NCBI GenBank assembly: GCA_035221665.1
Contig: CM069133.1
Span: 44,826,001-44,890,000, forward strand
DNA from: Okamejei kenojei
Taxonomy: Eukaryota
Direction: 5' to 3'
DNA: 64,000 nucleotides
The notes below the pieces were generated by a model. That model ran no database searches. It had not been told where the DNA came from and saw only the letters and a program-made list of their open reading frames with translations. The translations under genes and the position numbers were made by a program. Numbering within the stretch: the stretch's first letter is position 1; each line of letters starts with the position of its first letter. Positions 20,403-54,614 of the stretch are shown here, one piece after another.

Positions 20403-20451
20403 ATGCTGTTTATTTTGCTTTGTGTCTTTGCACTGCCTGTCACCGCTGATC
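20403..20451 (+). CDS. Exon 1: signal peptide [16 protein letters not shown]
   Basis: ATG in context AGAATGC, hydrophobic leader, perfect donor C|GTAAGT in phase 1 that matches the exon 2 acceptor. Confidence 0.8.
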
Positions 20452-32400: not shown

Positions 32401-35400
32401 CTGTTAGTGTCACAATCCCACCTCTCCCAGCTCACCACGTGGTGAGGGTGACAAACAGCACAGCAAACATCGCAGCTCAACCGCCTTCCACAAGGGCAGG
32501 GACCCAGGGTGGGCGCAGCCTCCTACAGTGACTGTGGCCCTCAGATCAGTCTTAACGTTACATCTCTGTGTCTTCACAGGCTGCACTGTCAGTGGTTGGA
32601 ACATGCAGACACCGGACAAGGTGACGGGGAGGGTGGGGAAGCTCATGGTTCTGTACTGCAAGTTCACTCACCCTCACCATGAATACAAAGACAACATCAG
32701 CATCATCTGGAGTGAGAAGAATGCCAACAAGATCTTTTTCAAATACACAAATTATCTATCAAGCAACAAGTATAAAAATGTGATCATGAATAATGTAGAA
32801 ACTCGCTACAAACCAATGGGGGACCCGCGGAAGAACGATGCTTCCATAATCATTAATCAGCTGAGAAAGACGGATACAAACAAGGCCCTCAATTGTCGTG
32901 TTGAGCTCACAGAGCAAAACGGAGCAAATTTTGGATGCCCACATGGGCCTATCACAGTATCAGGTGAGGAATTATTGTAACTGAATGATTATTGTACTGT
33001 AAACTAATGATTTGCCTGTGATTCCGATGTCACTGGCATCGCAGACAATTGTTCAAGCTGTTGACTTGTTGGGTACATCACTGGGAGATCATGTCCTGGT
33101 TTGACCGCCTAAAATACAACACGTTGCACTAAACTGAATTTAACTCTATTAACCATCCCTCAACCCCACTTGACCCGCTGATCAACATCCTGCTGTCGTT
33201 TTTGATAACCATGTTCACTCATACTCCTCATTTCTGCCTTGACCATGATGTACAGTCACTGTGGAATGGGGTGATGTCATTGCCACATCTGGCCTGCTGT
33301 TATAGTCACATATTATGTCTCCTCCAGTTAAGTTTCAGATATTGGTATTGGTTTATTATTGTCTATTGCACTGAGATACAGTGCCATTTTTCCGAGTGCT
33401 ATCCTGACAAATCATACCATTGAGGCACTAGAAACTGCAGATGCTGGAACCATGAGCAAAACACAAAGTGCTAAAGACACAGTGGGTCAAGCAACATCGG
33501 TGGAGGAAATGGACAGGCAATTATCTGGGTGGGTTCCCTTCAAACTGATGGAGTAGTAGGGAGAAAGATGGGAATGGGGCAAAGCTTGCCCAATGATAGG
33601 TGGATGGAGGTGGAGGTGGGGGGGCATGGGGGAGGTGCCCATCAGATGGGTGGAGACAGTGATAATGGTGAGTGGTGGAAAGGAGACATAAAAGATGTCA
33701 GACAAGGAAACAAAATGTAAAGGCGGAGGCAAATGGATGTAATGGGTCAGGGGAGATGGGCAGGGGAAAGACGTGATAGAAGGAACTATGGGATTTGTGG
33801 ATGAGAGATGAATACGGGAGAAAAAAAGGAGCAGTGTGACAGGGATAATGGGAGCAAAGTGTGCACAGTGGGCTGGTGGGGGGGGGGGGGGAGTGGGAGG
33901 TATTATTTGAACTTTGAGAGTTCAGTGTTCATTACGGTTGGGTTACTCAAGCTACTCAAGCTGACCATGAGGTGCTGTTCTTCCAGTTTGTGTGTGCTCT
34001 CACGCTGATAATACACAAGGCCAGTGACAGTCAGGTTGGTGTGGGAACAGAAAGAGGAGTTAAAAAGCATAGTAACCAGGAGCTCCAGCAGGCCTTGGCA
34101 TGATTGGCAACCTGATAATCATGTTTCTCTCCTGCTTTTTTTCTGTTTGATGGCAATGTAACTATTGTAATCTTGTATTTAATACTTTCATCATTGAGCC
34201 CAGTGTCTCGCACTTCACTAACCATTGCCTCAATGTGTCACATTTGTTTTATTTAATTGTGTCTCGTAAGGAGTTTCTCCACATGTTCCTTGGCACCCTT
34301 TAGCATTGTTCTCCACTTCTACATATTCCATCTGCAATCTTGTTACAATTCAATGGAAAGTGAACATGTAGTAGAACATGCAGTAGAAAATGTAGTAGGG
34401 GTATACTACATCCACTGGATCCTCCCTTATCAATCCTGCTTGATATATTGTCTACCCTAACCCTAAACTTCACTTAAAGTGTCAACAGAACTTCCCCTTC
34501 ATCAAGAATTAAAACAGAAATTGCTGTAAAATTAATCAGGTCTGAATGCAAAGTCAACTGGAGGGGCGACATTATCAATGTAGGGAGATGTGTTGCTGCT
34601 ACTCAGGAGGATTTAATCTAGTTTGGCAGAAAGTTGGTAACTGGAGCAGGTGGAGCGTTTGAATGGGATGTAGACTTCAGCTTAAGACTGATCAGAAGGG
34701 CTGGCAGGGCCAGGTTAACGAACGCTATTTATAAAGAAGATGAAGTTACATATATAGTTACATTTCACCTCTCTAGAGCAGCGCTGGAGGGTCACGTACA
34801 GATGGGTCAGAGTGGGAGTGGGATGGAGAAACATGGTCACAGATGTGTAGGAAGGAACTGCAGGTGCTGATTTATACCGAAGATAGACACAAAATGCTGG
34901 AGTAACACAAAGTGCCAGGCAACATCTATGGAGAAATGGAATAGATTCTTCTTCAGGTCTGAAGAAGCGTTCCATTCAGAAACATCACCTGCTCCTTTTG
35001 TCCAGAGATGCTGCCTGATCCGCTGAGGTACTCCAGCATTTTGTCTATCATCGTGGTCACAGACACAGGTGAAGTATTGATGAAGAAAATGTGGTTAATG
35101 CGTTCGACCAATGAATAATGCCCATATTTTAAATCTTTCTCTATCCGAGGTGATGTCAGCGCATCCATGGTGATTGGGAAGAGAGGAGGTGGTGCCACAC
35201 TGAGCTGCCCCTTCAGTCGCTCGAGCGTAAAGAGCAAGGTGATCACTATCAACTGGATGAAGGGGACTCCATGGGGAGAGTCCGTTGTCTTTAATTTTAC
35301 CCGCCCCTACCCCACAGGTGGCCACGGCACTGTCAATGTAAATATAGGAGGTCGATATGAGCTGGTGGGAAGCCTAAACAAGGGAGACGCCTCCATCAGA

Positions 35401-38400
35401 GTGAGGGGACTCACGTTGAATGACACCAACGACTATTTCTGTCATGTTTGGACCTGGAATTCCCCTCTGAATAAAGATATTCAGGTGACTCAGGATGAGA
35501 CGGGACTACAGGTTTTGGGTAAGGAAACAGTCAGTGTTGAGGAGTAAATGATAAAATCACATTGAACAATGGTAAGCAGAATGAGCTTCGTTCTGTTTCA
35601 TCTCTGAATATTTCACTCCATTCTCCTGCTGGGTCTCTTTCAAATCTTCACACCTTCCTGGTTCTCCCCCTGCACCAATGAATAACAGTGAATGTAATTG
35701 ACTTTTATCCCTCTCTAGGCTTCAGCCACCATCTTGGAGCAATCGTGATAATGTATCTGGAGATACCTGTGTGTGCGGGAGGGAATGGGCAGGTTGATCA
35801 TTTGAGCTGCCATTTTTTGAGTCTACTTTCTTGTGATTGGCTTCACTTTCTAGTGTTAAACATAGGTGGACATCATGTCCAATCTCCATTGCTGGTGTTC
35901 ATGGGAGATCATGGGACCTCCAGTGACATTGTTGTCAGCCTCTGGTTCTGGTAATGAGGGAGGGGAGAAGAGAGAGTAACTCAGGTGTGAGTGATCCTTG
36001 ATTATGTTGGCTGTTTTCCCAAGGAATAAATGCAGTTGATGGGCGGGGGAATGAGGGAAAACCTTTTACTCGATCTACATGGTTAATCCTGAGCTTTCTG
36101 TTGCTTGTAATCTTAATCATCCATGCAATTCCCCCTCTGACTATTTTTTGTGATTTTCTTATAACCAGTCTAATGCAATTTGAAGAACAGGGCTCACTGC
36201 ATCATTCCAGATTGCATTGAATTCAAGAATTTTGGATGTTACTTTTTCTCTCTTTACTCAGAACTAACCAGCTCTACTGAAGATCAGCAAACTGGAATAT
36301 TAATCAGTTATTCTCTCAACGATTATTGCAACTTAAAATAAGTTAGCTGAAGTTGCAGGGGTTGTATAGAGGGGCGGATTGGAAATAGGAAATATCTCTG
36401 AAAGGGTGAGTCTAGGTTTGCTGTTGATGAAATTATCTGGTTGATAAATTAAAGAAGAAAGCTGGAGACAGAGAACACAAACAAAGATATAAACCAGAGC
36501 TGCAAAATGCACGTCAGAGCTGCAAGAAACACCCTGCAGATCAGGCAGTGTCAGTGGAGAGAGGAGACCTGAGTCAGTCTTGCAGATGGATAACCTGCTG
36601 CAGAACTTCTGATAAAAACAGCGAGAAAGTTACCAGAAATTGTTGTATTCAATGTTGACTCAATGATTCATTGGATCAACCTTGAATAGAACAATTTCTG
36701 GTGACTTGCTCGCTGTTTGTATCAGAACTGGCGGGTTCTACCACATCTGCGATACTGACAGTTCTCCTGAAGAAGAGTCATGACCCAAAACGTCACCCAT
36801 TCATTCTATCCAGAGATGCTGCCTGCCCGCTGAATTACTCCAGCATTTTGTGTCTATTTTCGGTTCAATGATTTCTTTATTATCACATGTACCAAGTGCA
36901 GTGAAATACTTTTTTGCATACAGATCAGTAAGAATATCACCTTACATAAATAAGCACAATCCCCCCCGGTTAGTACATAATGTACAGAAGAATCCACTGA
37001 GTCTGGGCAACAGTTGCCATTTTGCACCATTTTACAGTCCTAGTTGCAGTGGCCATAGAGGCCCATTGCAGCCGCCGCTTCTATTCCAGTTGTCCTGGAA
37101 TGTTGACCCTCACCTTGCACAGCCCTCTTCAGCCCTTCTTCCCCACGGGCGGTGTGTGGTGGGGGGGCTTCTCCCGCAGATGAGATTAAGGTGCGGAAGT
37201 TAAAAACCCCTCCACCCCTCCTGATTCGGTTGACCATGCCATTTCTGGTTGGCTGTCAGTTACTAGCAGAGTTCCGCAGGGTTTGGTGCTTTGGCCGCTG
37301 CTCTTCACGTTGTATATTAATGATTTGGATGAGGGGATTGAAGACTTTGTGGCCAAGTTTGCGGATGATACGAAAATAGGCGGAGGGGCAGGTAGTGCAG
37401 AGAAAGCAGGGTGTCTGCAGAAGAACTTGGATAGGTTGGGAGAGTGGGCAGAGAAGTGACAGATGGAAAAGTGTGGAAAAGTGTGGAGTCATGTATTTTT
37501 GTAATAGGATTAAAGGCGTTGATTAATTTCTAAATGGGGGAGAGAATCCAGAATTCGGAGGTGCAAGGCGACTTGGGAATGCTCGTGCAGGATTCCCAAA
37601 AAGTTAATCTGCGAGTCGATTCAGTTGTAAAGAAAGCAAACAAAATGGGATGTGGAGGAGATGTTTCCATTAGTGGGATAGTCTAAGACGAGAGATTTTA
37701 GCCTCAGAATTAAAGGACGTCCTTTTAGGAAGGAGATGAGGAGGAATTTCTTTGGTCGGAGTGTGATGAATCTATGGAATTCTTTGCCACAGAAGGCTGT
37801 GGAGGCAAAGTCGGTGGATATATTTAAGGCAGAGATAAATCGATTCCTGATTAGTGCGGGGTGTCAGAGGTTATGAGAAGGCTGGAGAATTGAGTTAGGA
37901 GAGATAGATCAGCCGCGATTGAATGGCGGAGTAGCCTTGATGGGCCGAATGGTCTAATTCTACTCCTATCACATATAATTGTATGAACCGTGCCTCCGTA
38001 GATGAGCTTATGGTGCAGACCCTAAGACCCCCACCCCACCCAACCTGATTCAGCTACCCACGCCTTTAGCCATCCTCCTCTCTGGTTCCTCATCTTCAAG
38101 GTCAAAGCTCAATGGGAGCCATGAAGGCTCCATCTTGTCCAGACTAAAGCTGAGATGTCTTTAGTTCAGATTGGCCCTTAATAGAATACTGCAGGAGGTC
38201 AGGAACAGATGGATCAGAGTGGGAATGGGATGGAAAATCCAAGTCACAAATGTGGATGAACTATTGATAAAGACCGTGTGGTTATTGTATTCAATTACTA
38301 AATCATATTCACACTTTAAAACTCTTCTCTATGCAAGGTGATAATGACAGAGCATCCATGGTGATTGGGAGGAAGGGTGCGACTGCCACACTGCCCTGCT

Positions 38401-41400
38401 CCTTCAGTCCCTCGAACAGGAATCCCAGCTCCATCACCATCAGCTGGATGAAGGGGAATCCATCAAAATGGTCTGTTGTCTTTCATCACACTTCTCCCCG
38501 CCCAGCAGCACATCGCATTCCTGTAAATGTAAATATAGGGGATCGATATGAGCTGGTGGGAAACCTTACGCAGGGAGACGCCTCCATCAGAGTGAGGCAA
38601 CTCAAACTGGGTGACGCCAGCGATTACTCCTGTCACGTTTCTGTCAGGAATTCAACGTTGATGACTGTGACTCAGGATGAGATGAAACTGCAGGTTGTGG
38701 GTAAGGAAACGTAAGTTATGCTGTAAACGATAATATCATATTGAACAACCTTAAGAGGAATGAGCTCCCACTGACAGCGTAGACCAGCACAGGAACAGGC
38801 CCTTTGGCCCGCAATGTCTGTACCAAACATGATGCTACGTTAATCTCATCTACCTGCAGGTGATACATTTCTTCCATTACCTGCATTTCAAAAAGCCTCT
38901 AAAACTCCACTATCATAGCTGCCTCCACCTCCACCCCTAGCAGTATTTTCCTGGCACCCACCACCCTCTATGTAAACAATAACTTTCCCCAAATATCTCC
39001 TTTCATCTTTTCCCCTCTGTCCTTATCACAATGCCGTCTATTCATTGACATTTCTGCCATAGGCAAAGGATTCTGACTCTCTGTCCTATCCATGTCTTTC
39101 ATATTTTTATAAACTTTCGACAGTCCAGAAAAACAGTTCAAATATGTCCGACCTTTTCTTATCACTAATACCCTCTAATCCAGGCAGCATTCTGGTAAAC
39201 CTCTTCTGAACCCTTTGCAAAGTTTCCACATCCTTCCTGTAATGGGTGAGAACTGCACATAAAACAGAATGCAATAATCCCAGTGTCGTAACTAAAGTTA
39301 TATAGAGCTACAACATGACTTCATGACTTGTATTCAGTAGATAGACACTAAATGCTGGAGTAACTCACCGGGGACAGGCAGCATCTCTGGAGAGAAGGAA
39401 TGGATGACGTTTCAGATCGAGTATCTTCTTCTTGACCCGAAACATGACCCATCCTTTCTCTCCAGAGATGCTGCCTACCCAGCTGAGTTACTCCAGCTTT
39501 TTGTGTCCATTTTCAGTTTTAACCAGCATCTGCAGTTCCTTCCTACACTTCTTGTATTCAGTATCTTGACCAATGAAAGCAAGCATACTGTACACGTTTT
39601 TAACATGTTGCCATTTTCAGAGAGTTATGGAATTGGATCCCAATATTTTTCTGTACATCAGTAATTTTAAGGGTCTTGCCCTTGTCTACTTTCCACTTGC
39701 ATTCAACCTCTCAAAGTCAACACTTCACACGTGTTCGGATCAAACTCCATCTGCCATTTCTCTGCCTATATCTGTATTTAGATTAAAAATTGCAGTATCT
39801 TTCTACAGTTCTACAGTTATCTGCCTTCCTCATGATAGTCTTGCACTTTCAATAAGCACACTACAGACCATGCGTGGGTTTGATATTTGAGCTGCCACTT
39901 ATGTGGACTGTACTCTTGCAATTGACTTCACTTTCTCATGTTTGAACAGAGGTGAACGCCACTGTCTCATCTCTAATGTCACTGTTGACAGCAGTCTTGT
40001 GCCATCTCCAGTGATATTGTCATCAGCCTATGGTTATGGTGGTATGGGTCAGGTGATATTGACTTCTGAGGCAGTTCTGGCCAGTTCTTGTACAAACAAT
40101 AAAGGGCCTGTCCCTCTTTGGTGACAACTGAAGACAACTGAAGACTTCTCTTGATGCCGGTAGCTGTCGCCGGTTGACGTAGGTTGACTTAGGTAGTCGC
40201 CAATTGAATTCACCGAAGTCAGCACCGGCGACAACCTACGTTATCCTGGCAACAACCTACGACAGCACCTACGTCAGGAGAAGACAAGCTACGAGAAGCC
40301 CAAGGTTGCCAAGAGTCGCCGAAAAGTTTAGACCATTTCAAAATCCAGCGGTGATCAGAAAAACGTTACGACTCTTTAGGCGACTTGAGGAGACAACTCA
40401 CAACCATACAGATGATACCCGGCGACCGTGTGGCGACTGCCCAGTCGCATGTAGTGGCCTAAAAAAAATCGCGTAAGTTGGACAGGCCTTAAGCAAGTTA
40501 TTGAAATTGTTGCTTTAAATGTTAGCACAAAGGCTTCATGCTGCCCAGACAGAAGATGAGGTGCCGTTGCTTGAGATTGGGCCTCGTTAGAACAGTGCAG
40601 GAGGTCTGAGACAGACAGATCAGAGCGGTAGTGGGATGGAGAATCAAAGTCACAGGCATGGATGATGTATTTTTATAAACCATGTGGAATAGATTGTTAA
40701 ATACAGCTTTTGTCTTTACAAGATGGAAAGAAGAAGACACCCATGGTGATTGGGAAGAGAAGAGATTCATCCATACTGCCCTGCTCCTTCAGCCCCTTGA
40801 ACAAGAATACCAGCCCCATCACTGTCCGCTGGATGAAGGGGAATCCACGGGAGGAGTCCACAGTTTTTAATCACACCCACCCCCACTCTGTGAACCGTCC
40901 CTACACTGTCACTGTAAAGGGAGGAGGTCGATATGAGCTGGTGGGAAAACTAGACCAGGGAGACGCCTCTATCAGAGTGAAGGAGCTCAGAGTGAACGAC
41001 AGCAGTGACTATTTCTGTCACGTTTGGGTCAGGAATTCCACACAGGAGACGGTGACTCAGGATGAGATGAAACTGGAGGTTGTGGGTAAGGAAGATCTGT
41101 CTGTGTTGTGCTGTGAACGATAAAATCACATTAACAACTGTAAGAGGACATGAGATCCACTGACAGCTGGAGCCGAGATCGGCCCACTCCATTGTAGGTT
41201 CCAACCCTTGCCCTGGGCTTCCCTTGCTCAGCACTGCCCCCAGTGGTTGGACAACAGTGCTGATTCCAGCCAGAATGCACGGAGCTCCCTGCAGCAGGAT
41301 CAGAGATTCAGAACCACATTCATCTGCTGAACCTCCAGTCCCTGTGTCTGTGACATGGTCTGTGTTGCAAAGATCCACAGACTGCCCTGGGGTATTTACA

Positions 41401-44400
41401 TCCGTCTCTTTCATTCACATTGAGTCCGGGAACCTGTATGTTCTCTCACTGAATATTACACAGACAGTACAGCACAGGAACAGGCCCTTTGGCCCGCAAT
41501 ATCTGTGCAGAACATAATGGTACTGTAAGTTAAACTAATATCATCTGCCAACACATGATCCATATCCCTCCATTTTCTGTAGATCCATGTGCTTCTTAAA
41601 AACACTATCATATCTACAAATATTTCACTGCAGTCTCCTAGGTGTGTTCTTCCAATCCCCATTCTGAAGGACTCTATCTGCACACACCATCAACAGTGAT
41701 TAATTCAATTAATTTAATTTAATTTCTTCCTTCTCCAAGTCCCAGCCACCATCCTGAAGCTGTCTGTTGTGAGCGACAATGTAACTGGAGAACACACCCT
41801 CGTGTGCTGTGCTGAAGGGAAGCCCCCTGCAAACATCACGTGGATCGACCCAGGGAACAGCGCACTGCCCGGGAACAGTAGTGAGATGACAGTCACGCAT
41901 GATCCAGAGAAACTACTGACTGTGGGAAAGATGCTTCACCCCAGACTGCCAGGGAAATACACGTGTGTGGCTGTGAATGAGTACCAGAGAGACACGCGTG
42001 AGATCCCCCTATTCGACGATGTGAAATGGTTGGTGCAGGTCCTCCGCTTTGGATTACCCATATTTGCTATTGTCCTCCTTGTGATGGTATTTGTTCTCGT
42101 GTCTTTGAAAAAAGGTGAGTTCGCTAATAACAACTGCATTGTGGGCTGTTGTGGGTGTTCTTGGGACAGGTGGCATTTTCAAATATTATAGGCCAGAAAT
42201 GTGAACAGGAGGCCAGTCATCCCTGGTTAGGCCACATTTGGAGTATTTTGTCCAGTTCTGGTCACCACATTTCAGGAAGGATTTGGACACTTTGGAGAGG
42301 GTGCAGAGGGTTACAGAATATTGCCTGGATTAGAAGATTTTAGCTATAAGGAGAGGTTGGATTGTTTTTCTCTGGAACATCTGATGCTGAGGGGCGAACT
42401 GATCAAAGAATGTCAAATTCTGAGACACATAGTTAGTCTTTTTCCCCGGAGTTGAGGTCAAAAACTGGAGGGCGTGGTTTAAGGTGAGAGTAGGAAAGTT
42501 TTAAAGGAGATTTAAAAAGTGCCATTTGTTCAGAATGGTTGGTGCCTGGAATGTGCAACCAGGGGAGATGTGGAAGCTGACATGATAGCATTGTTTAAAG
42601 AGCATTTATACATGTAAATGTGCATGGAATGGAAATAGATCAACCATGTGCAGAGAGATGCGATCGGTTTAATTTGGCATTGTGGTCGGCACAGACATCG
42701 TGTGCCAACGTTAAATCTTCAGTTCTGGTGGACTGGGGCTGTACCCCTTGAAGGGTCAAGTCTGCCCTCACCATTGTTACCCTGACAGACCTTTTCCATG
42801 GTGACTTGGGTATAACAGGGTCAGGAATTCCTGTTCTCAATAATACAGTCCTGAGATAAGGTATTCATTGCCCTTTCCCTCCGATTAATTTGTGGGAAGG
42901 TTCGGCGGTGATTCTGTCCTAAGATCCTCGCTGTTCTTCAAATGCTTGGGTATCATTTGAAAAAGGTTCTGAGCTTTCCGAATCAATCGTGGACCAGTTT
43001 GCAGATTATGTGAAATTGAGTGGGAATGTGATGGCTCAAGGTTTGAAGAGAAAATGTGAGATAATCCACTTCAGTAAAAAAAGCTGGCAAACTTCAATAC
43101 TGTTACAGCGGTGACGGATTGGGGAATACCGAAGTAACTCAATTTATGTATTAAACCGGTGGATTTCGGAAAACAAATGTAATGTTGGCCTTTAATGCAA
43201 GAAGATATGAACTCAGGTATAAATGTATAGGTCCTTGGTCTCTATGCTATCAAAAGGACATGTGGGCGTGGAGAAGATGTTACCAGCAGTGAGAGAGTCC
43301 AGGACCAGAGGGCACAGCCTCAGAATAAAAGGATGAACCTTCAGAATGGAGATGAGGAAGATTTTTTTTTTAGCCAGAGACTGATGAATCGGTGGAATTC
43401 AATGCCACAGGCAACAGTGGAGGTCTAGTCAGTGGAAAGTTTAAAGCGGAGATTGATAGGCTCTTGATTAGGTCCTTAGATTTGTACAACAGCAACAAAT
43501 TCTTGCATTCATGTATTAATTTATTATTATAGTCACTTCTACTGTGATACAGTGAAAATCTTTGTTTGCATGTTATTTGGTCGAATCTAATCATACTACA
43601 CTTGAGTACAATCAATCCATATACAAGTACAACAGGTAGTGTAGATAGAAAAATAGCAGAGTACATAATATTGTGTTTTAGACTAGTAGAGATACAGCGT
43701 GGAAACAGGTCCTTTGGCCCACCATGTCTGCGCCGACCAGCGAGCACCCTGTATCATTAATACTTATGTCTATCATGTGTGGGAGGAAACCAGAGCACTC
43801 AGAGAAAACCCAAGTGGTTACAGGGAGAACATACAAACTCCATACAGACAGCACACATAGTCACGATCGAACCCGGGTCTCTGGCGCAGTAAGGCAGCAA
43901 TTCTACTGCTGTGCCACTGAGCTATCCGTAGTTACTTCATTGCAGTGTTACAGCTCCAGAAAAAATTCAGATAAAAAGAGAAAAAATGCAAGGGTCGCAC
44001 TGAAGTAAGTTGGAAGATCGGGACTGCACCTTAGTTTGTGGGAGGACCATTCAGTAGTCTGACAAAAGTGGGGGAAGAAGCTGTTCCTGAATCTGGTGGA
44101 TTGTGTCTTTAAGCTTATGTATCTTCTGCCCAATGGGGGAGGGGAGAAGATCCTTGATTATGTTGACTGCTTTCCTAAGGCAGCGTGAAGTGCAGATGGA
44201 GTCAATAGTGGGAAGTGTGGTCTGTGTGATGGACTTGACTACATCCCCAACTCTCTGAAATTTCCTACAGTCTTGGGGAGCTGTTCCCAAGCTGTGAAGC
44301 ATCCTGAGAGTATCCCGAACCTGACCCAAAACATTATCTATCCATTTCTCTCCACAGAGCCTGCGTGGCCCTCTAAATCTCTCCAGCACTTTGTTTTTTA

Positions 44401-47400
44401 CTGGGGAAAGTAGTTAGGGAGCAGCTGCTCTTGGGACAAGTTTGCATCAGGAAGTGAGAGTGATTTAATGATGAGAGGTTGTAAATTTAGTCTCTAAGGA
44501 AAAGGATGCATATGCAAAGTTTAAGGAACTGAAATTAGGCAGGGCCTTTAAGGAAGATTATGAAAAAGGAAAGGGAATTATGAGGCCCAGATGGGTTAGA
44601 GCTGAAAGTAGAGAAGTGTGCTAAAGGAGGAGAGTGGGAGAGGTTACAAGAGGGAATTCTCACAGAATACTTTCCTGTGTCTTTGACAGGTTCACAGCAG
44701 CGTGTGTGTTGTGTTGATGCCAGCGTGGCCAATGGTCGGAAACCACAAGGACCAGAGCCAGGTAATTGGGGAATCTGCTTAAACTTCCTTTCACATTGAG
44801 GACATTCTTTGGAAAAGCAGAACTGAAACCTGCATTTAATAACTGGCCTTTCAATTGTCGCTACCACCTACCCTCCTTCCCTACCTCCCATAGCCTCCTA
44901 ATTAGATCAGCAAAGACAATCCCTCTCAGAGCAAATCGGGTTGTGTGTTCAAGTGGAATATTAATACTTAAAAGACTCGCCTCAAGGCCCAGGGCTTGCA
45001 CTAAGATTCCAGATTCCTCAGTCATGGGAATTAATCTATTCTGTCAAACATACTGGAAGTATTTAATATTGGATACCTGTCCTTAACTCTAAAGATTGAA
45101 GGTCCAACCTATTTAATCTCTTTGTCATCCCAGAAACCAGCCTCATGAACTTTTGCTGCACAACCTGCAAAGTAAGTACAGGTAGTTCTGCTCAACATAG
45201 GTTTCGAAATTTTAAATTGGCCACAACAGGATTGCTGAAATAGGTAATGCTATTATGCAGCCTGAATTGGTTATAAAGTAATCTCTATCAGAAAGTAGAG
45301 ATCCAGTTAAAAGTTACTTAGGAAAGCAGAAAAAAAGCATGTTCATGTAACCTCTCTGCAGTAATAGTAAGATTAAACAAGAACTTACCAGTTTGAAGTT
45401 TGATCTTTATTTTATGAGGCGTTACGATGAGGGATTACGTGAAGAACACCGTCCAGCCGTTGGTGCATCAATCTTCAAAGCAGCGGAGTGAAATCACAGG
45501 TAATAATGACTGAAGTATAATAGTACGATAACAGAGACTAGAACTACTAGATGATATTTATGAGGGTTGGGAGCGGAGGGCACGTAATCCCTTATCATAA
45601 ATTGAGAAACTAATGGATGTGTCCCTACTGAATGTAACTCTGAACTCATGGGTAAATAAGAAGACAGAGCACTTCTGGCTGTATTAATCGCACTATAGCT
45701 TAATTTTTGATCAAAGTAAAGAGTGGACAAAAACTCCAGTACGTCTGGGATGCCTGCAATTTGATGTGAGATATTCTGCTGTAGACAGAATACATCCCAC
45801 TTCCTTATCGAGGTGATGTACTGCTTCTGAGTACTATCCCTACAGGCCTACATGAGAACATCCATGGTATGATCAGACAGTCCTCTCCCCAGGTATGGCC
45901 TCCTTAAAATCTGCAAATTAACAGATCAATACGATCATGTAAAGGATGTTGATCGCCAGTTACTGGATTTACCAGTAGATTTTTACATTTGGGAATAATC
46001 ATGTGAGGCTGACAAGCAATTTGCAATACGAGAGGGAACCATGGTTGTGTAGGCTAATCTGGTACTACCAATACTCCTAAAGCGGAGTCCTACTTAATTT
46101 TTTGCAAGCATCGACTGATGAGACAGAATGGAGGAAATGCATCAACAAACATTCCACCCCAATGCAGTGAGAATGCATCCACCGCTGCTGCACCAGGATC
46201 TGGTTCCCATGAAACATATCTGGGCAACTGATGGTTTAGTCTAGATGCAAACAAGTCTATATCTGGCATTCCATACTGAGCAACCACTTGATTAAATATG
46301 TCCTGATTTAACATCCATTCTAAGTTATCATCGAATTGGCGTGACCTAATGTCAGCTACTGTGTTGAATCTACCTGGTAAATATATTGCTGAAAGCCAGA
46401 TGTTTTGGTCAATGCACCAGCCCCAGATCTGATTAGCCAGTCTATCACAAGACTGTGACTTGACTCCATCCATGTGGTTTACATATGCCGTTGCTGTAGT
46501 GTTGTCAATCTGAACCTGCACCTGCAAGTCACTCCTGGCAGAGCAATAAGCTTTAAGCCCATACCAGGTTCCCAAAAGCTCTAAATAATTGATCCCTCTT
46601 AATTGAAGAAGGGATGTCTCATTAGTATTCCATCTGCCTCCACAACTGGAAGACATATCTGTAGCACCCCAACCCAGCGCACTGACATCCGTCTGTAATA
46701 TTATGGAAGGTGGTTAAACCAAAACCTCCCTGGAGCTTTTTGAGACATTTATGATCCACCATTGAATGTCTGAAATTGCCCCAGCTGACAATTGCATAGG
46801 CCTATCAAAATGACCCGCATGTGTCCTCAGTGCCTGTTCTTTTGCTCGTTGTAATTGTTGATAATGCAGAGGTCCAAACTGCACAGCTGGAAAAGCAGCC
46901 ACCAATTTACCAATTAAACTGGCTACTTGGCTAATTGAAGGTCCTTGTTCACTAAGGAGATTAACACAATCCTCAATTAACTGCTGCCATGTGTCCCTGG
47001 GCAAAGTCACTAACATGTGATTCAAATTAATGGTAAAGCCCAAATAATCAATGATTTGAACTGGTGACCATTTGGATTGCCATTAGGCAATGCTATACGT
47101 CCCCCAGTCTTTTTAGACCTAGGAAAAATACTTTATAGAATCATAGAATCATTGAAAATAGGTGCAGGAGTAGGCCATCAGCCCTTCGAGCCTGCACTGC
47201 CATTCAGTATGATCATGGCTGATCATCAAACTCAGTTCCTAGATTATTTACCAAATTGTTAAAACCTGTTCTAGGATTACTCCAAGCTCAGGGGCATGTT
47301 GTAATGGCCCATTTAGATGATATTTTAATTGTCGGGAAGACTCGGGCTGTAGCTGAATCATCTGTTTCAATTGTTAAACTCACTTTTGAACAATTAGGGT

Positions 47401-50400: not shown

Positions 50401-53400
50401 TTTTCACATTGTGTTGGTCTTGAGTCCTTGTAATAATAAATACCTCACACCTTGGCAGGTTATACACTGTTTATTTAGAATAAAGAACTACAAGCTCTTA
50501 CTTGAGAGTTAACTTCATACTGAAGAGTGCAGTAGCTCGCGACGCTAATAAGCTAGTGCAAATAAGCGTAACGACAAAAGCATGACTCATAACGAGCCAC
50601 TGATCTGCACATTGGCACAATTATTTTCAGAATGTAATTTTCTACAATAAGATGTTCCTTAAGAATGCAGCATTCGTGGTATAGCTGAACTGTCTGTACA
50701 TTGCTTTTTGGGGTAAGGAGACCAATATTATACCTAATACACCAGCTTTGGTCTTGAAAGGCCAATGTAATTTGGAATTGATCCTATTATTCCCAAAGTA
50801 ACAATACCTGATCAATGTATCTCATAGGTTTGCACAAAGAACCTCATCTATGTAACCCTCCACCACCCCTGAGGATAGGGTTGGAAAGTTCTGCATGTTG
50901 CGATTACTCCAGGATTCCCTTCTGTTTTATCTACAGTTTTGACCCTGTGGGAGGGGATGAGGTGGACAGTTTGGGAGCTCTAATTTCTCTATTAAAATAC
51001 CCATTGTTTTTTTGTGTCTTTGACAGGTTCACAGGAGCCTGAAGGGGACCCTATTTACAGTGTTGTTGATTTAAACATGGAGACAAGAAACAGGGCAGCC
51101 ACCCAGGCAGTTCCAACACCAGGAGAATTGGACAGGAATGTTGGTGAGTGCAGTGATGGTGATCATTTGGAATTTGCACAGAGGTAACCTGGAGGAAGAG
51201 ATGCAGGAAGTAAATGCCAGCTTTCATGATCCAGCTCCTGTGGTTAAAAGTTGTAATTTTATGGATACAGCATGGAAATAGGCTCTTCCGCCCACTGAGT
51301 TTATGCCAACCATTGATCATACTTTCACACTAATTCTATATCAACCCACTTTCTCATCTCCTTGGATCTTTGGGGCAATTTTACAGTCCAATTAACTCGC
51401 ATATCTATGAGGTGGTGGAGGAAACTGGAACAGCCGGAGGTAACCCGAGCATTCACGGGGACAAACACAGACTCTATACCAACAACACCCAAGCTCAGAA
51501 TTGAACCCAGATCTCTGGTGATGTGTTGTGGTGCAACTGGCAGAGCTGCTGCCTCACAGCGCTTGAGACCCGTGTTTAATCCCAACCTTGGGTGATATTA
51601 GTGTGGAGTTTGCACATTTTACCAGCTGTGCCACTGTCGTTGAGCAAGGGAACTCCTATTGATCTGAGAAACAAAGAGGAGATGTTTCTGAGGCAAGCTG
51701 GAGTAGGTAGAGATCCCAAGGTTAGCAAAGTGGACCAGCTTACAGACAATCTTCACACTGAGATGCCCCCGAGCTGGAGCCAGTGGAGGTCAATGGAGCG
51801 TAGTGTACAGATTAAAACTCATGTAAGCGGTGACAAGGCGGGAACTATTTAAGATAGGGACAAAGTTTCAGCAGCAGAAGTGTTTGGAGTGGGGCTGGGG
51901 GGAACATACAGTATCATGGATGTAGAAATTAGAGGCATTAGAGTGAGAAAAACTTGACTAAGCTCCCAAAGCATCTTTGCAGAATGGATTTGAGAAGATG
52001 CTTGGTCTTGTGAGCAAACCTGGAACGAAGAATTACTGTTCACAAGTAAGGGTCACCTACTTTAAGATGACTTGATTTTTGTTCCTTAGATCAACTGTCT
52101 TTGGAACTCTCTTCCTCAAAAGATTAAGTTTTGAATATTTTGAGCCAGAGATAGATGGAGAATATCTGGAAACAGAAATATCTGGAAACCCACAACAGGT
52201 CAGGCAACCTCTGTGAAAAGAGAAAGCACCAACATTTGTGCTGGACACACCTTTGTCAGACTTTTCATGCTCTTTAGGAGCACAGGGGTGAACGTTTAGC
52301 ACAGGAGATATCAGTCATGATGTCATTAAAAAGCAGAGCTGAGTGGTTGATTCTTGCTCTCAACTTGTATTCAAAGGTTACAAAGGACTTTTATTGTCAC
52401 GTACCATTTAAGATACAGTGATATGCAAATTATCATACTGCCATACAAGAGACACAATTACATAAAAGTAAACATCCACCACAGCAGATTCCCTACTTTC
52501 CTCACTGTGATGGAAGGCCAAAAAGTCCAATCATCATCCCCTTTAAGGAATATAGGAGTGAAACCTTTCCTTGCAAACACAGGAGATACAAACCTATCCC
52601 TACATCTCATCCCTTACATCCATCCAGGAACCTCCAGCAGTCCTTCCAGGTGAGACAGAGGTTCACCTGCACCTCCTCCAACCTCATCTACTGCACCTGA
52701 TGTGCCCTCCTTTCCATTGGCGAGACCAAATATAGCTTCGGCGACCGTTCCACTGAACACTAACTCTGTGCAACAAGATCTGCTGGATTTCTCTGTTGCT
52801 ATGCATTTTAACTCCCCTTCCCATTCCCACCCTAACCGCACTGTCCTGGGCCTCCTCCATTGTCAAAGTGATACCATACACAAACAGCACCTCATAATCT
52901 ACTTGGGTCATTTACAACCTAACGGTGTGAACATTGAATTCTCCAATTTTAGGTAACTTACCAACAAAACCCATCTCCACTTCTCCCCACCCCCTTCCCA
53001 CCCCACCTTTCTCTTCTCTATGCCCCATCACTACGAGCACCCATTTTAATTCTTCCTCTCCCCTTCCACCCACATTCATTCCTCTGGCTTCACAATTCAC
53101 ATATATCCTTATCTCTCACCTTGAGTCTTTCACCTCTGGCCACTGTTCAACCCACCTGCCAATCAAATAACCCCTTCATGTGTAGGGAACAGTGAACACA
53201 TGGTGAGCAGCAAAACACTGCCAGTCCCAAGATTCGCGCCTCCAGGGTCTTGTCAATATTCTATTTTTCACCTGCAGGGAAGTAAAACTGCAGAAAAGGG
53301 AGTAGGGTGAAAGGAGAAGGGAGAGATTGGGCTGTCAGGGCTTGGGCTGGGGGGGAGAGAGACAGTTGGACAGTTACAGTTTTACACGTGTACCGAGGTA

Positions 53401-54612
53401 CAGTGAAAAGCTTTTGTTGCGTGCCATCCAGTCAGCAGAAAGACAATACATGATTACAATCGAGCCATTTACAATGTATCGATACATGATAAAGGGAATA
53501 ACATTTAGTGAAAGTAAAGCCAACAAAGTCTGATCAAGGACAGTCCGTGGGTCACCAAAGAGGGAGATAGTAGTTCAGGGGCTACGATTGTGAGGTTAAG
53601 ATAGCAAGGCGATGAAGTTGTGCAATAAATTTGTGTCCTTTCCAGATTCCTGTGACTCTTCAGATGCCCTCATTTACAGCATTGTTCACATTCAAAGCCG
53701 TTCCCGAGTAGGAGTGGAGATGGGTAAGGAACAGTCAGCACACGGTGAGCTGTGAAACAACAGTAGCAGTGTGGACGCTCCATGCAAAATAGTGTCCTCA
53801 ACAGGCTGGGAGGCAAACCCTTGATGTATTGATTAGAAACATCCACTGGCATTGACAATACACACTGGGCTTCCCATCGAGCCTGTGATCCTGAGCTCTC
53901 CATATCCAACATTCAGGGAAGGTGCAGCAAAGACCAGACATAGTGGAAGCAGTAACAAAGACCCAGGACATAGAGTTACTAGAGATCCTGGTGTTGTTTA
54001 TTTTCCACTTCCCATCATCGGGCAGCCAAGCATCAGACCTGGAAGTACAATGCTGTCTGTTCTGCAGTACATTTCTGTATCTATAGAAGCAGCGAGGGTT
54101 CTCTTGGGCTTGCCATGTATCACAATGAGGGGTGAAGAACAGTCTTGGCAAAAGATGGACCACTATAGGAAGGGCAATTGGAACAGGCATGAGACAGCGA
54201 TTATCAAAGGTGGGGACTCATGGAGTCATACAGCACAGAGACAGGCTCTTTGGTCCAACTTGCTCAAGCCAGCCAAAATGCCCCATCCACACTAGTCCCA
54301 ATTGCCTGCATTTGGCCCATATGCCTATACACCTTTCCAATCAATATACCTGTCCCAATGTCGTTTAAATGGGAGTGGGTGGTTTGTGATAAAAAACAGT
54401 GGGGAAGAGATGCTGGAATGCAATAACAATCTGTGTTCTTTTCAGACCCCCAGGAGTCTCAGAATAACACTCTCTATGGCAATGTGCACATTCAAAGACC
54501 TCCCTGCAAAGAGGAGGAGACTGGTAAGGACCACCGAACACACCGTGAACGGCAAAATACACACATCTGCGAAGACACCGCTTGGGAACACATCAAACCC
54601 ATTTCATACTGA
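20403..54612 (+). CDS. Spliced Siglec-15-like type I IgSF receptor (SP-V-V-V-V-C2-TM-cytoplasmic ITIM/ITSM). Join 20403-20451, 32580-32963, 35150-35518, 38338-38700, 40723-41085, 41740-42114, 44690-44761, 51027-51143, 53646-53723, 54446-(54523 donor or 54612 stop)
   Basis: All exons are bounded by AG/GT, all junctions are phase 1, internal exon lengths are multiples of 3 (384, 369, 363, 363, 375, 72, 117, 78, 78) and there are no in-frame stops. Domain order is that of a type I receptor. The 3' end is uncertain. Confidence 0.85.
22833..23738 (-). mobile_element. 5'-truncated CR1 inserted in L1 ORF2
   Basis: (gaaacata)n tail; [14 protein letters not shown]. The L1 QTGFIPKRQS coding sequence resumes across it, with TATA on both sides. 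Confidence 0.92.
26061..30682 (-). mobile_element. Full-length DIRS1-group retrotransposon (gag ~30476-29285, RT/RNase H ~29310-27500, tyrosine recombinase ~27509-26590), ORFs frameshifted
   Basis: [13 protein letters not shown]; RNase [12 protein letters not shown] and PDIDLF; [11 protein letters not shown] and ILATAGW. Inverted terminal repeats and an internal complementary region at ~26281-26395. Confidence 0.95.
32311..32378 (+). repeat. Short tandem duplication at the L1 5' junction
   Basis: agtctgatagtgga occurs three times; cagcaggagtctgatagtgga occurs twice. Confidence 0.8.
32580..32963 (+). CDS. Exon 2: N-terminal V-set Ig domain, Siglec-15-like, retains the sialic-acid-binding Arg
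   Basis: Acceptor ttcacag, donor G|gtgag. Motifs [25 protein letters not shown] and CRVEL parallel my recollection of Siglec-15 (VLPCTFTHPH, GNPRRNDLSL, YFCRVEF). Arg codon at 32897-32899. Confidence 0.9.
33425..34110 (-). mobile_element. Degenerate Penelope-like 3' fragment
   Basis: gaaactgcagatgctgg end and gagttcagtgttcat...gaggtgctgttcttcc, reverse-similar to the PLE fragment at ~52555-53180. Confidence 0.65.
34850..35050. repeat. Palindromic Penelope-derived short repeat with hammerhead-like core
   Basis: gatagacacaaaatgctggagta ... tactccagcattttgtctatc inverted arms; ctgaaga...gaaac at ~34959-34983. Confidence 0.65.
35150..35518 (+). CDS. Exon 3: V-set Ig domain 2
   Basis: ATLSCPF...INWMKG...RYELVG...GDASIRV...DTNDYFCHV. 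Acceptor ccgag, donor G|gtaagg. Confidence 0.9.
35608..35770 (+). pseudogene. Truncated relic of a C2 exon and its acceptor intron after V2
   Basis: ag|gcttcagccaccatcttggagc...gataatgtatctggaga resembles the exon 6 start ag|tcccagccaccatcctgaagc...gacaatgtaactggaga. Upstream intron aatatttcactccattctcct matches aatatttcactgcagtctcct at ~41619. Confidence 0.65.
37240..37985 (+). mobile_element. CR1 LINE degenerate 3' fragment
   Basis: VPQGLVL, INDLDEG and KFADDTKIG remnants plus CR1 3' UTR. Confidence 0.85.
38338..38700 (+). CDS. Exon 4: V-set Ig domain 3
   Basis: ATLPCSF...ISWMKG...RYELVG...GDASIRV...DASDYSCHV. Acceptor gcaag, donor G|gtaagg. Confidence 0.9.
38775..39330 (-). mobile_element. 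Old CR1 3' fragment
   Basis: cagcacaggaacaggccctttggccc tail and aatccaggcagcattctggtaaacctc. Confidence 0.7.
39338..39545. repeat. Palindromic Penelope-derived short repeat
   Basis: gctggagtaactca...ggcagcatctctggagag ... ctctccagagatgctgcc...tgagttactccagc inverted arms. Confidence 0.75.
40103..40489. mobile_element. Non-autonomous PIF/Harbinger-type MITE
   Basis: TIRs agggcctgtcc / ggacaggcct flanked by TAA at 40100-40102 and 40490-40492; internal gtcgcc/ggcgac repeats. Confidence 0.75.
40723..41085 (+). CDS. Exon 5: V-set Ig domain 4
   Basis: SILPCSF...VRWMKG...RYELVG...GDASIRV...DSSDYFCHV. Acceptor tacaag, donor G|gtaagg. Confidence 0.9.
41740..42114 (+). CDS. Exon 6: C2-set Ig domain plus transmembrane segment
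   Basis: [16 protein letters not shown]...GKYTCVAVN, then hydrophobic [20 protein letters not shown] and a KK stop-transfer. Polypyrimidine acceptor, donor G|gtgagt. Confidence 0.9.
42210..43480 (+). mobile_element. Two degenerate CR1 3' fragments
   Basis: [13 protein letters not shown] remnant (ggttaggccacatttggagtat) and RTRGHSLRI remnant (aggaccagagggcacagcctcagaata). Confidence 0.7.
43680..43920 (-). mobile_element. HE1-like V-SINE
   Basis: Reverse complement of the SINE head and body: tgtgggaggaaacc, gatcgaacccggg, gtaaggcagcaa. Confidence 0.75.
44690..44761 (+). CDS. Exon 7: cytoplasmic, [24 protein letters not shown] (no Tyr)
   Basis: Acceptor tgtgtctttgacag|GTTCACAG is identical to that of exon 8. 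Donor G|gtaatt; 72 nt, phase 1-1. Confidence 0.65.
45363..50164 (-). mobile_element. Second DIRS1-group retrotransposon (different subfamily) in intron 7, internally deleted and rearranged
   Basis: Same outer termini (aatagtaagattaaa... and ...ctcacgtgactccgaagtaaaat). Gag ORFs 49969-48889; RNase [25 protein letters not shown] and AFPPF. The ICR is truncated at ~45600. Confidence 0.92.
47137..48488 (-). mobile_element. 5'-truncated CR1 inserted in the DIRS RT
   Basis: tagaatcatagaatca tail; [17 protein letters not shown] and [13 protein letters not shown]. Confidence 0.92.
51027..51143 (+). CDS. Exon 8: cytoplasmic, [39 protein letters not shown] (ITIM-like)
   Basis: Strong polypyrimidine acceptor, donor G|gtgagt, 117 nt, YxxV motif. 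Confidence 0.8.
51265..51620. mobile_element. Two opposed SINE remnants
   Basis: Minus copy 51265-51515 (ggaggaaactgg, gaattgaacccag) and plus head 51530-51620 (gagctgctgcctcacagcg). Confidence 0.6.
52555..53180 (+). mobile_element. Penelope-like 3' fragment (GIY-YIG endonuclease region)
   Basis: [29 protein letters not shown] and [10 protein letters not shown]. Confidence 0.8.
53646..53723 (+). CDS. Exon 9: cytoplasmic, [26 protein letters not shown] (canonical ITIM LIYSIV)
   Basis: Acceptor tcctttccag, donor G|gtaagg, 78 nt. LxYxxV at 53669-53686. Confidence 0.8.
54446..54612 (+). CDS. Exon 10: cytoplasmic, [26 protein letters not shown]... (ITSM TLYGNV). Ends at donor 54523 or reads through to TGA 54610-54612
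   Basis: Acceptor ttcttttcag; TxYxxV at 54469-54486; internal donor G|gtaagg gives a 78-nt exon, like exon 9. Confidence 0.75.
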
Positions 54613-54614
54613 GT

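What the first reader, a model, noticed from the sequence alone, without database searches (positions are those of the whole stretch)
20403..54612. Hidden 10-exon Siglec-15-like receptor with a non-canonical V-V-V-V-C2-TM-ITIM/ITSM architecture
Seen: ten phase-1 exons splice into one uninterrupted frame across 34 kb of nested transposons. Known: Siglecs normally have one N-terminal V-set (two in Siglec-12) followed by C2-sets, and Siglec-15 is V-C2 with a TM Lys for DAP12. Here a Siglec-15-like V-set and C2-set are separated by three extra V-sets, there is no mid-TM Lys, and the tail carries three Tyr motifs. Inference: a lineage-specific, probably uncharacterised inhibitory or switch immune receptor of cartilaginous fish, and the best candidate here for a new system.
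Basis: partly seen in the sequence, partly recalled or inferred. Interest (0 to 1): 0.9.

Follow-up and report, generated by a model that had tools for sequence, protein, structure and literature searches.

The report
Skate multi-V Siglec-15-like inhibitory receptor gene
This is a real, intact gene for an immune receptor of a skate that carries one Siglec-15-like sugar-binding domain, three copies of a second V domain, one C2 domain and an inhibitory tail. It belongs to a gene family found throughout cartilaginous fish that databases predict but, in the literature searched here, nobody has studied.

Summary
Ten + strand exons, all phase 1 with AG/GT sites, encode leader, V1, V2, V3, V4, C2+TM and four tail cassettes. 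V1 is Siglec-15-like by sequence (7ZOZ, E 1e-11) and by fold (TM 0.86), and it keeps the sialic-acid Arg. V2-V4 carry His at that position.

The architecture is not unique or hidden. RefSeq models in related skates have the same domain order: Leucoraja erinacea LOC129695366 (694 aa, with TM and tail) and Amblyraja radiata LOC116971578. The basic V1-V'-C2-TM plan occurs in chimaera, sharks and rays, in both ITIM-tailed and Lys-TM short-tailed forms. It is therefore a paired-receptor family, separate from the canonical Siglec-15 that skates also have.

New here: decayed TM pseudo-exons lie after V2 and after V3. Both carry the same TGA at the TM Arg codon. The extra V' exons therefore came from duplicated [V'-C2-TM] units whose 3' ends had died.

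Homologues splice onward to a last 'IYATV' exon, which is not in the window.

No RNA evidence could be obtained. The likely function is an inhibitory lectin-type receptor. It is a new variant of a known kind, of moderate interest.

The parts
20403..20451 (+). Exon 1: start codon and signal peptide (16 aa plus 1 base), GTAAGT donor
   Evidence: 94% identical to the leader joined to a V1 in Amblyraja models P0003 and P0161.
32580..32963 (+). Exon 2: V1, a Siglec-15-like V-set domain with the C-R-V-E motif (essential Arg kept)
   Evidence: Pfam V-set, E 3e-6. PDB 7ZOZ Siglec-15, E 1e-11. The Arg is invariant in 29 homologues. AF2 model pLDDT 95; best fold match is 7ZOZ at TM 0.86, next best 0.70.
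35150..35518 (+). Exon 3: V2, a V' type V-set domain (C-H-V)
   Evidence: Pfam E 3e-15. 1:1 with Amblyraja domain 2, support 100/99. 81% aa identity.
35747..35970 (+). Relic 1: a scrap of a C2 start plus a decayed TM and 3' flank pseudo-exon. It has 5 in-frame stops, including TGA at the TM Arg codon
   Evidence: tblastn with Pristis P0136, E 9e-8. Translation and 72.7% nt identity to relic 2. TGA codon.
38338..38700 (+). Exon 4: V3, V' type
   Evidence: Pfam E 7e-14. 1:1 with Amblyraja domain 3, support 100/100; sister to V2, support 97/87.
39861..40055 (+). Relic 2: a decayed TM and 3' flank pseudo-exon. It has one in-frame stop, the same TGA at the TM Arg codon
   Evidence: tblastn with Pristis P0136, 56% identity over 66 aa, E 6e-14..
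40723..41085 (+). Exon 5: V4, V' type. It is the copy nearest to the single V' of rays
   Evidence: Pfam E 2e-13. 91% identical to Leucoraja P0160. AF2 model pLDDT 84; best fold match is 7ZOZ at TM 0.80.
41740..42114 (+). Exon 6: C2/I-set domain, stalk and transmembrane helix in a single exon. No Lys; one Arg at the outer border
   Evidence: Pfam I-set E 7e-7, C2-set_2 E 1e-4. 41-47% identical to the C2 of canonical Siglec-15 of sharks and skates, E 1e-18 to 1e-20. TM sequence.
44690..44761 (+). Exon 7: cytoplasmic cassette cyA (juxtamembrane, Cys-Cys, no Tyr)
   Evidence: 96% identical to Leucoraja P0160, 83% to Rhinoraja P0165. Mobula match.
51027..51143 (+). Exon 8: cyB with PIYSVV (ITIM-like, Pro at -2)
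   Evidence: 92% identical to P0160. Its acceptor flank is a 22-nt exact copy of that of cyA.
53646..53723 (+). Exon 9: cyC with LIYSIV (canonical ITIM)
   Evidence: 95% identical to P0160. Narcine match E 3e-6.
54446..54544 (+). Exon 10: cyD with TLYGNV. In-phase donors at 54524 and 54545.
   Evidence: 80% identical to Rhinoraja P0165, whose model runs to the position of the second donor and then into a last exon '...IYATVV...'. Donors. No such last exon in 54524-64000.

Best explanation
The stretch is one protein-coding gene of a skate. It encodes a type I membrane receptor: signal peptide, V1, three V' domains, one C2 domain, a TM helix and a cytoplasmic tail built from short one-motif exons. 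The gene very probably continues to an eleventh exon beyond the window.

Inferred mechanism:
- V1 has the Siglec-15 fold and keeps the Arg that makes the salt bridge to sialic acid. It binds a sialylated ligand.
- The three V' domains have His at that site, and this His is conserved in most V' domains of the family. They do not bind sialic acid in the Siglec manner. They act as a stalk, or as extra protein-binding or cis-interaction modules that push V1 away from the membrane.
- On ligation, Src-family kinases phosphorylate the tail tyrosines (PIYSVV, LIYSIV, TLYGNV and probably a last IYATV). These recruit SH2 phosphatases (SHP-1/2) and damp activation.
- Relatives with a mid-TM Lys and no tail are the activating partners, so the family works as a paired-receptor system.

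Evolution, shown by the sequence:
- The family is a chondrichthyan sister lineage of canonical Siglec-15.
- The extra V' exons arose when a [V'-C2-TM] unit already disabled by a CGA-to-TGA change at its TM Arg codon was duplicated.
- Its V' exons stayed open and spliceable, while the C2-TM parts decayed.
For: Shown:
- Domain types.
- Exon phases, splice sites and junction residues identical to homologues.
- The same chain in RefSeq models: Leucoraja LOC129695366 X3 (694 aa, tail 92-96% identical) and Amblyraja LOC116971578.
- V1 resembles Siglec-15 by sequence and fold, and its Arg is invariant.
- V2-V4 have His in the same column.
- The V1 clade is chondrichthyan only (96/90), the V' clade is supported at 98/99, and canonical skate Siglec-15 is a separate gene.
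- Family members with ITIM tails and members with Lys-TM short tails.
- Relic TM pseudo-exons share a TGA, and V2 and V3 are sisters.
- V2 and V3 have no stop or frameshift, while relic 1, which starts 229 nt after V2, has 5 stops in 63 codons.

Inferred from established knowledge:
- The role of the Siglec-15 Arg (R143) (PMC10264397, PMC7226832).
- ITIM recruitment of SHP phosphatases.
Against: - No transcript evidence.
- The RefSeq models are computational.
- The last exon is not in the window.
- dN/dS among V2, V3 and V4 is 0.54-1.17, so purifying selection on them is not demonstrated.
- Symmetric phase-1 exons can be skipped, so the four-V form may be only one isoform.
- Zebrafish Siglec-15 bound the tested glycans poorly (PMC7226832). 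Arg conservation therefore does not prove lectin activity.
- Several sialic-acid contact residues of human Siglec-15 (Y87, the C95-C104 loop) are not conserved in V1.
Confidence: 0.6

Rival explanations
1. The gene is real, but V2 and V3 are mostly or always skipped. They would be leftovers of dead duplicated units. The working product would then be the family's standard V1-V'-C2-TM receptor using V4 only.
For: - V2 and V3 sit in units whose C2-TM parts are dead.
- All V exons are symmetric phase 1, so skipping stays in frame.
- Relatives show isoforms that differ by one V exon: Heptranchias X2/X3 and Callorhinchus X1/X2.
- dN/dS is up to 1.17.
Against: - V2 and V3 keep open frames, framework residues, acceptors with pyrimidine tracts and GTAAGG donors, while the neighbouring relics collected stops and deletions.
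- Each has a 1:1 counterpart in the same order in Amblyraja and Leucoraja models.
Confidence: 0.15
2. The locus is an unexpressed or decaying member of a large tandem family. It would be a young pseudogene that has lost its last exon and is swamped by transposons.
For: - The last exon is not found within 9.4 kb downstream.
- Introns are 0.65-12 kb and full of LINE fragments.
- No RNA holder was found.
- The ectodomain evolves at a near-neutral rate.
Against: - All ten exons are intact, with good splice sites.
- The tail is 92-96% identical to the Leucoraja protein, more conserved than the ectodomain. This is what is expected of a working receptor under diversifying selection on its ligand-binding part.
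- Introns of 6-12 kb occur inside the gene, so a last exon beyond the window is unremarkable.
Confidence: 0.1
3. It is a dual or 'switch' receptor. The Arg at the outer end of the TM helix would couple it to an ITAM adaptor (FcR-gamma type), as in KIR2DL4 or chicken CHIR-AB1. The tail would add inhibition.
For: - An Arg lies 21 residues before the end of the TM.
- Canonical shark Siglec-15 has its Lys at a similar depth.
- The dead TM relics and the Pristis P0136 TM also have an Arg there.
Against: - The Arg is not conserved in the nearest relatives: Cys in Rhinoraja P0165, Trp in P0162, and no counterpart in Leucoraja P0160. All of these are single CpG-type changes.
- 20 hydrophobic residues follow the Arg, so it can sit outside the bilayer.
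- The family's evident activating members use a mid-TM Lys and a different TM sequence.
Confidence: 0.1

Closest known systems
Canonical Siglec-15 (human Q6ZMC9, PDB 7ZOZ; skate orthologues XP_032874289 and XP_055488226)
   Same: - The V1 sequence and fold, including the B-F disulfide with the Arg right after the F-strand Cys (PMC10264397).
- The C2 domain is 41-47% identical to shark and skate Siglec-15.
- A Mobula read-through model (P0130) fuses a family member to canonical Siglec-15, which suggests the genes are neighbours.
   Different: - It is a separate clade from canonical Siglec-15, which skates also have.
- There are three extra V' domains.
- There is no TM Lys.
- The tail is long and carries Tyr motifs, rather than being short and activating.
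RefSeq uncharacterised models LOC129695366 (Leucoraja erinacea), LOC116971578 / LOC116971575 / LOC116971577 (Amblyraja radiata) and LOC144611565 (Rhinoraja longicauda)
   Same: - Same family and the same exon junctions.
- LOC129695366 X3 has the identical V1-V2-V3-V4-C2-TM-cyA-cyB-cyC chain.
   Different: - Identity is 71-91% in the Ig domains, so this is another species or a paralogue.
- The Amblyraja model lacks the TM. It ends in an exon whose counterpart in the window (42889-42957) has no AG acceptor.
- The Rhinoraja model has one V' only.
CD33-related Siglecs and Siglec-12
   Same: An N-terminal Arg-bearing V-set plus a tail with a membrane-proximal ITIM and further ITIM-like or ITSM motifs. 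Siglec-12 has two V-sets.
   Different: - Homology is only distant: CD33 E 1e-5, fold TM about 0.66.
- CD33-related Siglecs use a B-E intrasheet disulfide. Their extra domains are C2-sets, not V-sets.
Paired activating/inhibitory Ig receptor families (KIR, LILR, PILR, teleost NITR and LITR, skate MDIR)
   Same: - A tandem multigene family with ITIM-tailed members and charged-TM short-tailed members that share similar ectodomains.
- A rapidly evolving ligand-binding domain.
- Variable domain number.
   Different: The ectodomain derives from the Siglec-15 lineage. No sequence relation to these families was seen in the searches.

Membership tests
[quoted passage not shown] | N-terminal V-set domain with the conserved F-strand Arg that pairs with the sialic acid carboxylate | tested here: met
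   The V1 C-R-V-E motif aligns with human R143. The Arg is invariant in a 29-sequence alignment.
[quoted passage not shown] | V-set followed only by C2-set domains | tested here: not met
   Three V-set exons lie between V1 and the single C2.
[quoted passage not shown] | Measured binding to sialylated glycans | not testable with these tools
   This needs recombinant V1-Fc, sialidase treatment and Arg-mutant controls.
Canonical Siglec-15 orthologue group | V domain falls inside the Siglec-15 clade of jawed vertebrates | tested here: not met
   V1 sits in a chondrichthyan-only clade (96/90). Carcharodon, Mobula, Amblyraja and Leucoraja Siglec-15 form their own clade (100/100), joined to the bony-vertebrate Siglec-15 clade only weakly (61/64).
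Canonical Siglec-15 orthologue group | Fold of the V domain like 7ZOZ | tested here: met
   TM 0.86, rmsd 2.1 A over 125 columns; the next hit is 0.70.
Canonical Siglec-15 orthologue group | TM Lys for DAP12/DAP10 and a short tail without ITIM | tested here: not met
   The TM has no Lys. The tail has at least three Tyr motifs.
Chondrichthyan V1-V'-C2-TM family (unnamed; RefSeq 'uncharacterized' or 'Siglec-15/12-like') | V1 clade domain, then V' domain(s) with C-H-V, then a C2 with the PPANITWI motif. Same phase-1 junction residues | tested here: met
ITIM-bearing inhibitory receptors | At least one (S/I/V/L)xYxx(I/V/L) motif in the cytoplasmic tail and no charged residue in mid-TM | tested here: met
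   LIYSIV in cyC, and TLYGNV fits the ITSM pattern. TM sequence.
ITIM-bearing inhibitory receptors | Phosphotyrosine-dependent recruitment of SHP-1, SHP-2 or SHIP | not testable with these tools
   Biochemical assay needed.

The most novel reading that the evidence does not exclude
The Siglec-15 lineage is treated as a single conserved activating gene in vertebrates. In cartilaginous fish it would instead be the seed of a large paired activating/inhibitory receptor family. Ectodomain length in that family would be tuned again and again by duplicating [V'-C2-TM] units and keeping only the V' exon. This skate gene would show the process in action: two dead TM exons sharing one founding nonsense mutation still sit in its introns.
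Probability: 0.5. Interest if true: 0.55.

Novelty: new variant of a known kind. Interest (0 to 1): 0.45.

Why it matters
Siglec-15 is a drug target and is described as one of four Siglecs conserved from fish to man, always as a V-C2 activating receptor (PMC7226832). This locus and its relatives show something different in the oldest living jawed-vertebrate lineage. There, the same V and C2 modules were built into a multigene family with inhibitory and activating members and variable numbers of V domains.

This gives a natural series for two questions. What does stalk length do for a lectin receptor? Was an inhibitory partner of Siglec-15 ancestral and later lost?

The intronic TM relics are also a clean, datable example of how a gene gains domains by capturing exons from a dead duplicate.

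The gene itself is an expected kind of immune gene, and automatic annotation in sister species already predicts it.

Tried and rejected
1. RNA evidence.
- The look-up of sequencing runs found no holder on record as RNA.
Local scripts used the whole window only as a BLAST subject.

No Amblyraja or Leucoraja DNA could be fetched, so there is no synteny and no dN/dS between species.

3. The last exon.
- Regex and tblastn with the tails of Mobula, Heptranchias, Narcine, Callorhinchus and Rhinoraja found no 'IYATV' exon in 54524-64000.
- A 'TAAIY' hit at 13311 lies in a LINE fragment.

4. The search for homologous proteins with the C2-TM exon, aimed at short transcript-derived proteins that cross junctions, gave only two fragments from other species.

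5. Logan protein P0008 reads through the V1 donor into the intron. It is unspliced and not evidence of splicing.

6. The TM-less end of the Amblyraja model maps to 42889-42957. The window has no AG acceptor there, so it was rejected as an exon here.

7. The similarity of Narcine coding sequence to the intron after cyB (51156-51236) is in another frame behind a stop. It was treated as a possible old exon extension, not as part of the model.

8. Five literature searches found no paper on this family.

9. The joined ten-exon protein was never built, searched or folded. All searches were made exon by exon, by reference.

10. Assembly gaps (5405-5583, 7362-7861, 61204-61335) were left as they are.
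Full report
**Observation**

The + strand between 20403 and 54612 holds six long open frames with Ig or leader character. Pfam assigns V-set to four of them (E 3e-6, 3e-15, 7e-14, 2e-13). It assigns I-set/C2-set to the fifth, which runs straight on into a hydrophobic TM stretch.

I placed the exon limits from AG/GT sites in the right phase and checked them together:
- L 20403-20451
- V1 32580-32963
- V2 35150-35518
- V3 38338-38700
- V4 40723-41085
- C2+TM 41740-42114
- cyA 44690-44761
- cyB 51027-51143
- cyC 53646-53723
- cyD 54446-54523

All internal exons are multiples of three and phase 1. Acceptors follow tracts that are 65-85% pyrimidine. Donors are GT(A/G)AG, except GTAAT after cyA.

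I did not build the joined protein. The nine split codons, read singly, give R, G, G, D, V, G, G, D, D. These are the residues found at the same junctions in predicted proteins of other skates and rays.

The introns range from 0.65 to 12.1 kb. They carry LINE-type endonuclease and reverse-transcriptase ORFs on both strands.

**What the domains are**

V1:
- Against solved structures, its best hit is human Siglec-15 (7ZOZ, E 1e-11). CD33 and myelin P0 are far behind.
- The alignment puts the V1 C-R-V-E motif on human C142-R143. R143 is the residue whose change to Ala abolishes sialic acid binding (PMC10264397, PMC7226832).
- In an alignment of 29 V1 and Siglec-15 V domains, only three columns are invariant: the B-strand Cys, the C-strand Trp and this Arg.
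- An AlphaFold model from that alignment (pLDDT 95) matches 7ZOZ at TM 0.86 and rmsd 2.1 A. The next fold scores 0.70.

V2-V4:
- They are 52-58% identical to each other and 23-25% identical to V1.
- They carry His in the Arg column.
- A model of V4 (pLDDT 84) also has 7ZOZ as its best match (TM 0.80), with a small margin over sodium-channel beta subunits and TIM proteins.

C2:
- It matches human Siglec-15 only weakly (E 0.01).
- It is 41-47% identical to the C2 of canonical shark and skate Siglec-15 (E 1e-18 to 1e-20).

**Relatives**

A full HMMER search with V1 and a word-indexed search with the Amblyraja protein recovered a family.

The same chain occurs in two skate models:
- Amblyraja radiata LOC116971578 (596 aa): V1-V2-V3-V4-C2, 72-88% identical per domain.
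- Leucoraja erinacea LOC129695366 isoform X3 (694 aa): V1-V2-V3-V4-C2-TM-cyA-cyB-cyC. Ig domains are 71-91% identical and tail exons 92-96%.

No hit is near 100% identical. The window therefore comes from another skate, or from a paralogue.

The simpler plan V1-V'-C2-TM occurs in Callorhinchus, Heptranchias, Mustelus, Cetorhinus, Heterodontus, Pristis, Hypanus, Mobula, Narcine and others. Automatic annotation calls these 'uncharacterized', 'Siglec-15', 'Siglec-12' or even 'CD276-like'.

Domain number varies repeatedly:
- Callorhinchus LOC103188797 has three or two V1 copies, by isoform.
- Heptranchias has two or one V'.

Two kinds of member exist:
- Long tails with several xYxx(V/I) cassettes: Callorhinchus, Heptranchias, Mobula, Narcine, Rhinoraja, Leucoraja.
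- A mid-TM Lys and almost no tail: Callorhinchus LOC103174418, Mobula hypostoma, Pristiophorus.

This is the signature of a paired inhibitory/activating receptor family.

**Trees**

I built a careful ML tree of 71 V domains (128 columns). A quick tree of 97 rows agrees with it.
- The V1 domains form a clade of chondrichthyan sequences only (96/90).
- The V' domains form another clade (98/99), again chondrichthyan only once all members are named.
- Canonical chondrichthyan Siglec-15 forms a third clade (100/100). It includes Amblyraja and Leucoraja orthologues and joins the bony-vertebrate Siglec-15 sequences.
- The order of these three groups is not resolved.

So V1 is Siglec-15-like, but the gene is not Siglec-15.

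Within V', the skate copies are monophyletic (91/92). V2 and V3 are sisters (97/87). Each window domain pairs 1:1 with the Amblyraja domain at the same position (100/99 or better).

**Origin of the extra V domains (new here)**

A fragment from Pristis pectinata (P0136) carries V'-C2-TM with an Arg in the TM. Searched back on the window, it hits two intronic places besides the live exon:
- 39861-40055, after V3: 56% identity over 66 residues, E 6e-14, one stop.
- 35782-35970, after V2: E 9e-8, five stops. A scrap of the C2 start precedes it at 35747-35788.

Properties of the two relics:
- They are 72.7% identical in DNA over 165 nt. This is the same level as V2 versus V3.
- Neither matches the live TM exon at the DNA level.
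- In both, the codon aligned with the Pristis TM Arg is TGA, in the same local context.

V4 with its flanks matches V3 with its flanks (71.6% over 661 nt) and V2 (73.3% over 431 nt).

The simplest history is this. An upstream [V'-C2-TM] unit lost its TM through a CGA-to-TGA change. That unit was then duplicated. The C2-TM parts decayed, while both V' exons stayed open with intact splice sites.

The relics also serve as an internal control. V2 (122 codons) has no stop, whereas relic 1, starting 229 nt after it, has five stops in 63 codons.

dN/dS among V2, V3 and V4 is high, at 0.54-1.17. Selection on them is therefore better described as 'kept open and fast-evolving' than as conservative.

**The 3' end**

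The exon has two in-phase donors, GTAAGG at 54524 and GTGAAC at 54545.

Narcine, Mobula and Heptranchias proteins leave the homologous cassette at the first position. The Rhinoraja model leaves it at the second. All of them continue into a last exon of the type '...(A/C)IYA(T/A)V...'.

No such exon exists in 54524-64000, which is filled with LINE copies. I therefore expect an eleventh exon beyond the window, carrying a fourth Tyr motif. The read-through tail is unverified.

On the motifs:
- Only LIYSIV is a canonical ITIM.
- PIYSVV has Pro at -2.
- The Thr that makes TLYGNV an ITSM is Ser in Rhinoraja and Narcine.

**The TM Arg**

The TM has no Lys. An Arg lies at its outer border. It is followed by 20 hydrophobic residues.

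At that position Rhinoraja LOC144611565 has Cys and a Rhinoraja paralogue has Trp. The Leucoraja protein has a different stalk without it. This weakens the adaptor-switch idea noted elsewhere in the scan.

**Limits**

- No run on record as RNA held the stretch.
- Expression, isoform usage and between-species dN/dS therefore remain open.
- Earlier notes of this scan report further family members 7 kb and 70 kb upstream, and Lys-TM members 9 Mb away. I did not test these.
- Five searches of the held literature found no description of this family.

**Verdict**

This is a real, intact gene (apart from its unseen last exon) for a multi-V, ITIM-tailed receptor derived from the Siglec-15 lineage. It most likely works as an inhibitory lectin-type receptor, paired with Lys-TM relatives.

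It is not a hidden or unique architecture. It is the skate version of a chondrichthyan-wide family that automatic annotation already predicts.

Novelty: a new variant of a known kind. Interest is moderate. The dead TM exons that record how the domains were gained are the most instructive detail.

Noticed in passing
window 35747-35970 and 39861-40055 (+): Two decayed TM pseudo-exons lie in the introns after V2 and V3. Both have TGA at the codon aligned with a TM Arg of a Pristis homologue. They are 72.7% identical to each other and unrelated in DNA to the live TM exon.
   Followed up: yes
window 54524 and 54545 (+): Exon 10 has two phase-1 donors 21 nt apart (GTAAGG and GTGAAC). Homologue models use one or the other, and then a last 'IYATV' exon that is absent from the window.
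   Followed up: partly
window 51156-51236 (+): The intron just after cyB resembles coding sequence of a Narcine model in another frame (43% over 28 aa, E 0.02), behind a stop. It may be an old longer form of the exon, or chance.
   Followed up: partly
window 42889-42957 (+): This stretch is 91% identical to the TM-less C-terminal exon of the Amblyraja model XP_032874704. The window has AA instead of AG in front of it, so it cannot be spliced in the same way here.
   Followed up: partly
window 42020-42114 (+): The Arg at the outer TM border is Cys or Trp in Rhinoraja relatives and absent in Leucoraja. Canonical skate Siglec-15 also lacks a mid-TM Lys and has Arg-His at the border.
   Followed up: partly
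P0130 (Mobula birostris XP_072113672), P0003 (Amblyraja XP_032874700), P0002 (Mobula XP_072113536): RefSeq read-through models fuse neighbouring family members. P0130 fuses one to canonical Siglec-15. This suggests the family sits in tandem arrays beside SIGLEC15.
   Followed up: no
P0001 (Protopterus annectens XP_043935463): A lungfish protein has seven tandem Siglec-15-type V domains before one C2. This is an independent multi-V expansion inside the bony-vertebrate Siglec-15 clade.
   Followed up: no
window 44668-44689 and 51005-51026 (+): The 22 nt spanning the acceptors of cyA and cyB are identical. This fits tail cassettes that arose by exon duplication.
   Followed up: partly
window 24907-25362 (-), 57602-60906 (both strands), 61396-63340 (-): LINE-type endonuclease and reverse-transcriptase ORFs fill the introns and the downstream flank. 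No other cellular gene was seen in 54.6-64 kb.
   Followed up: partly
They lie in the intron between the TM exon and cyA, and I worked around them.
   Followed up: no
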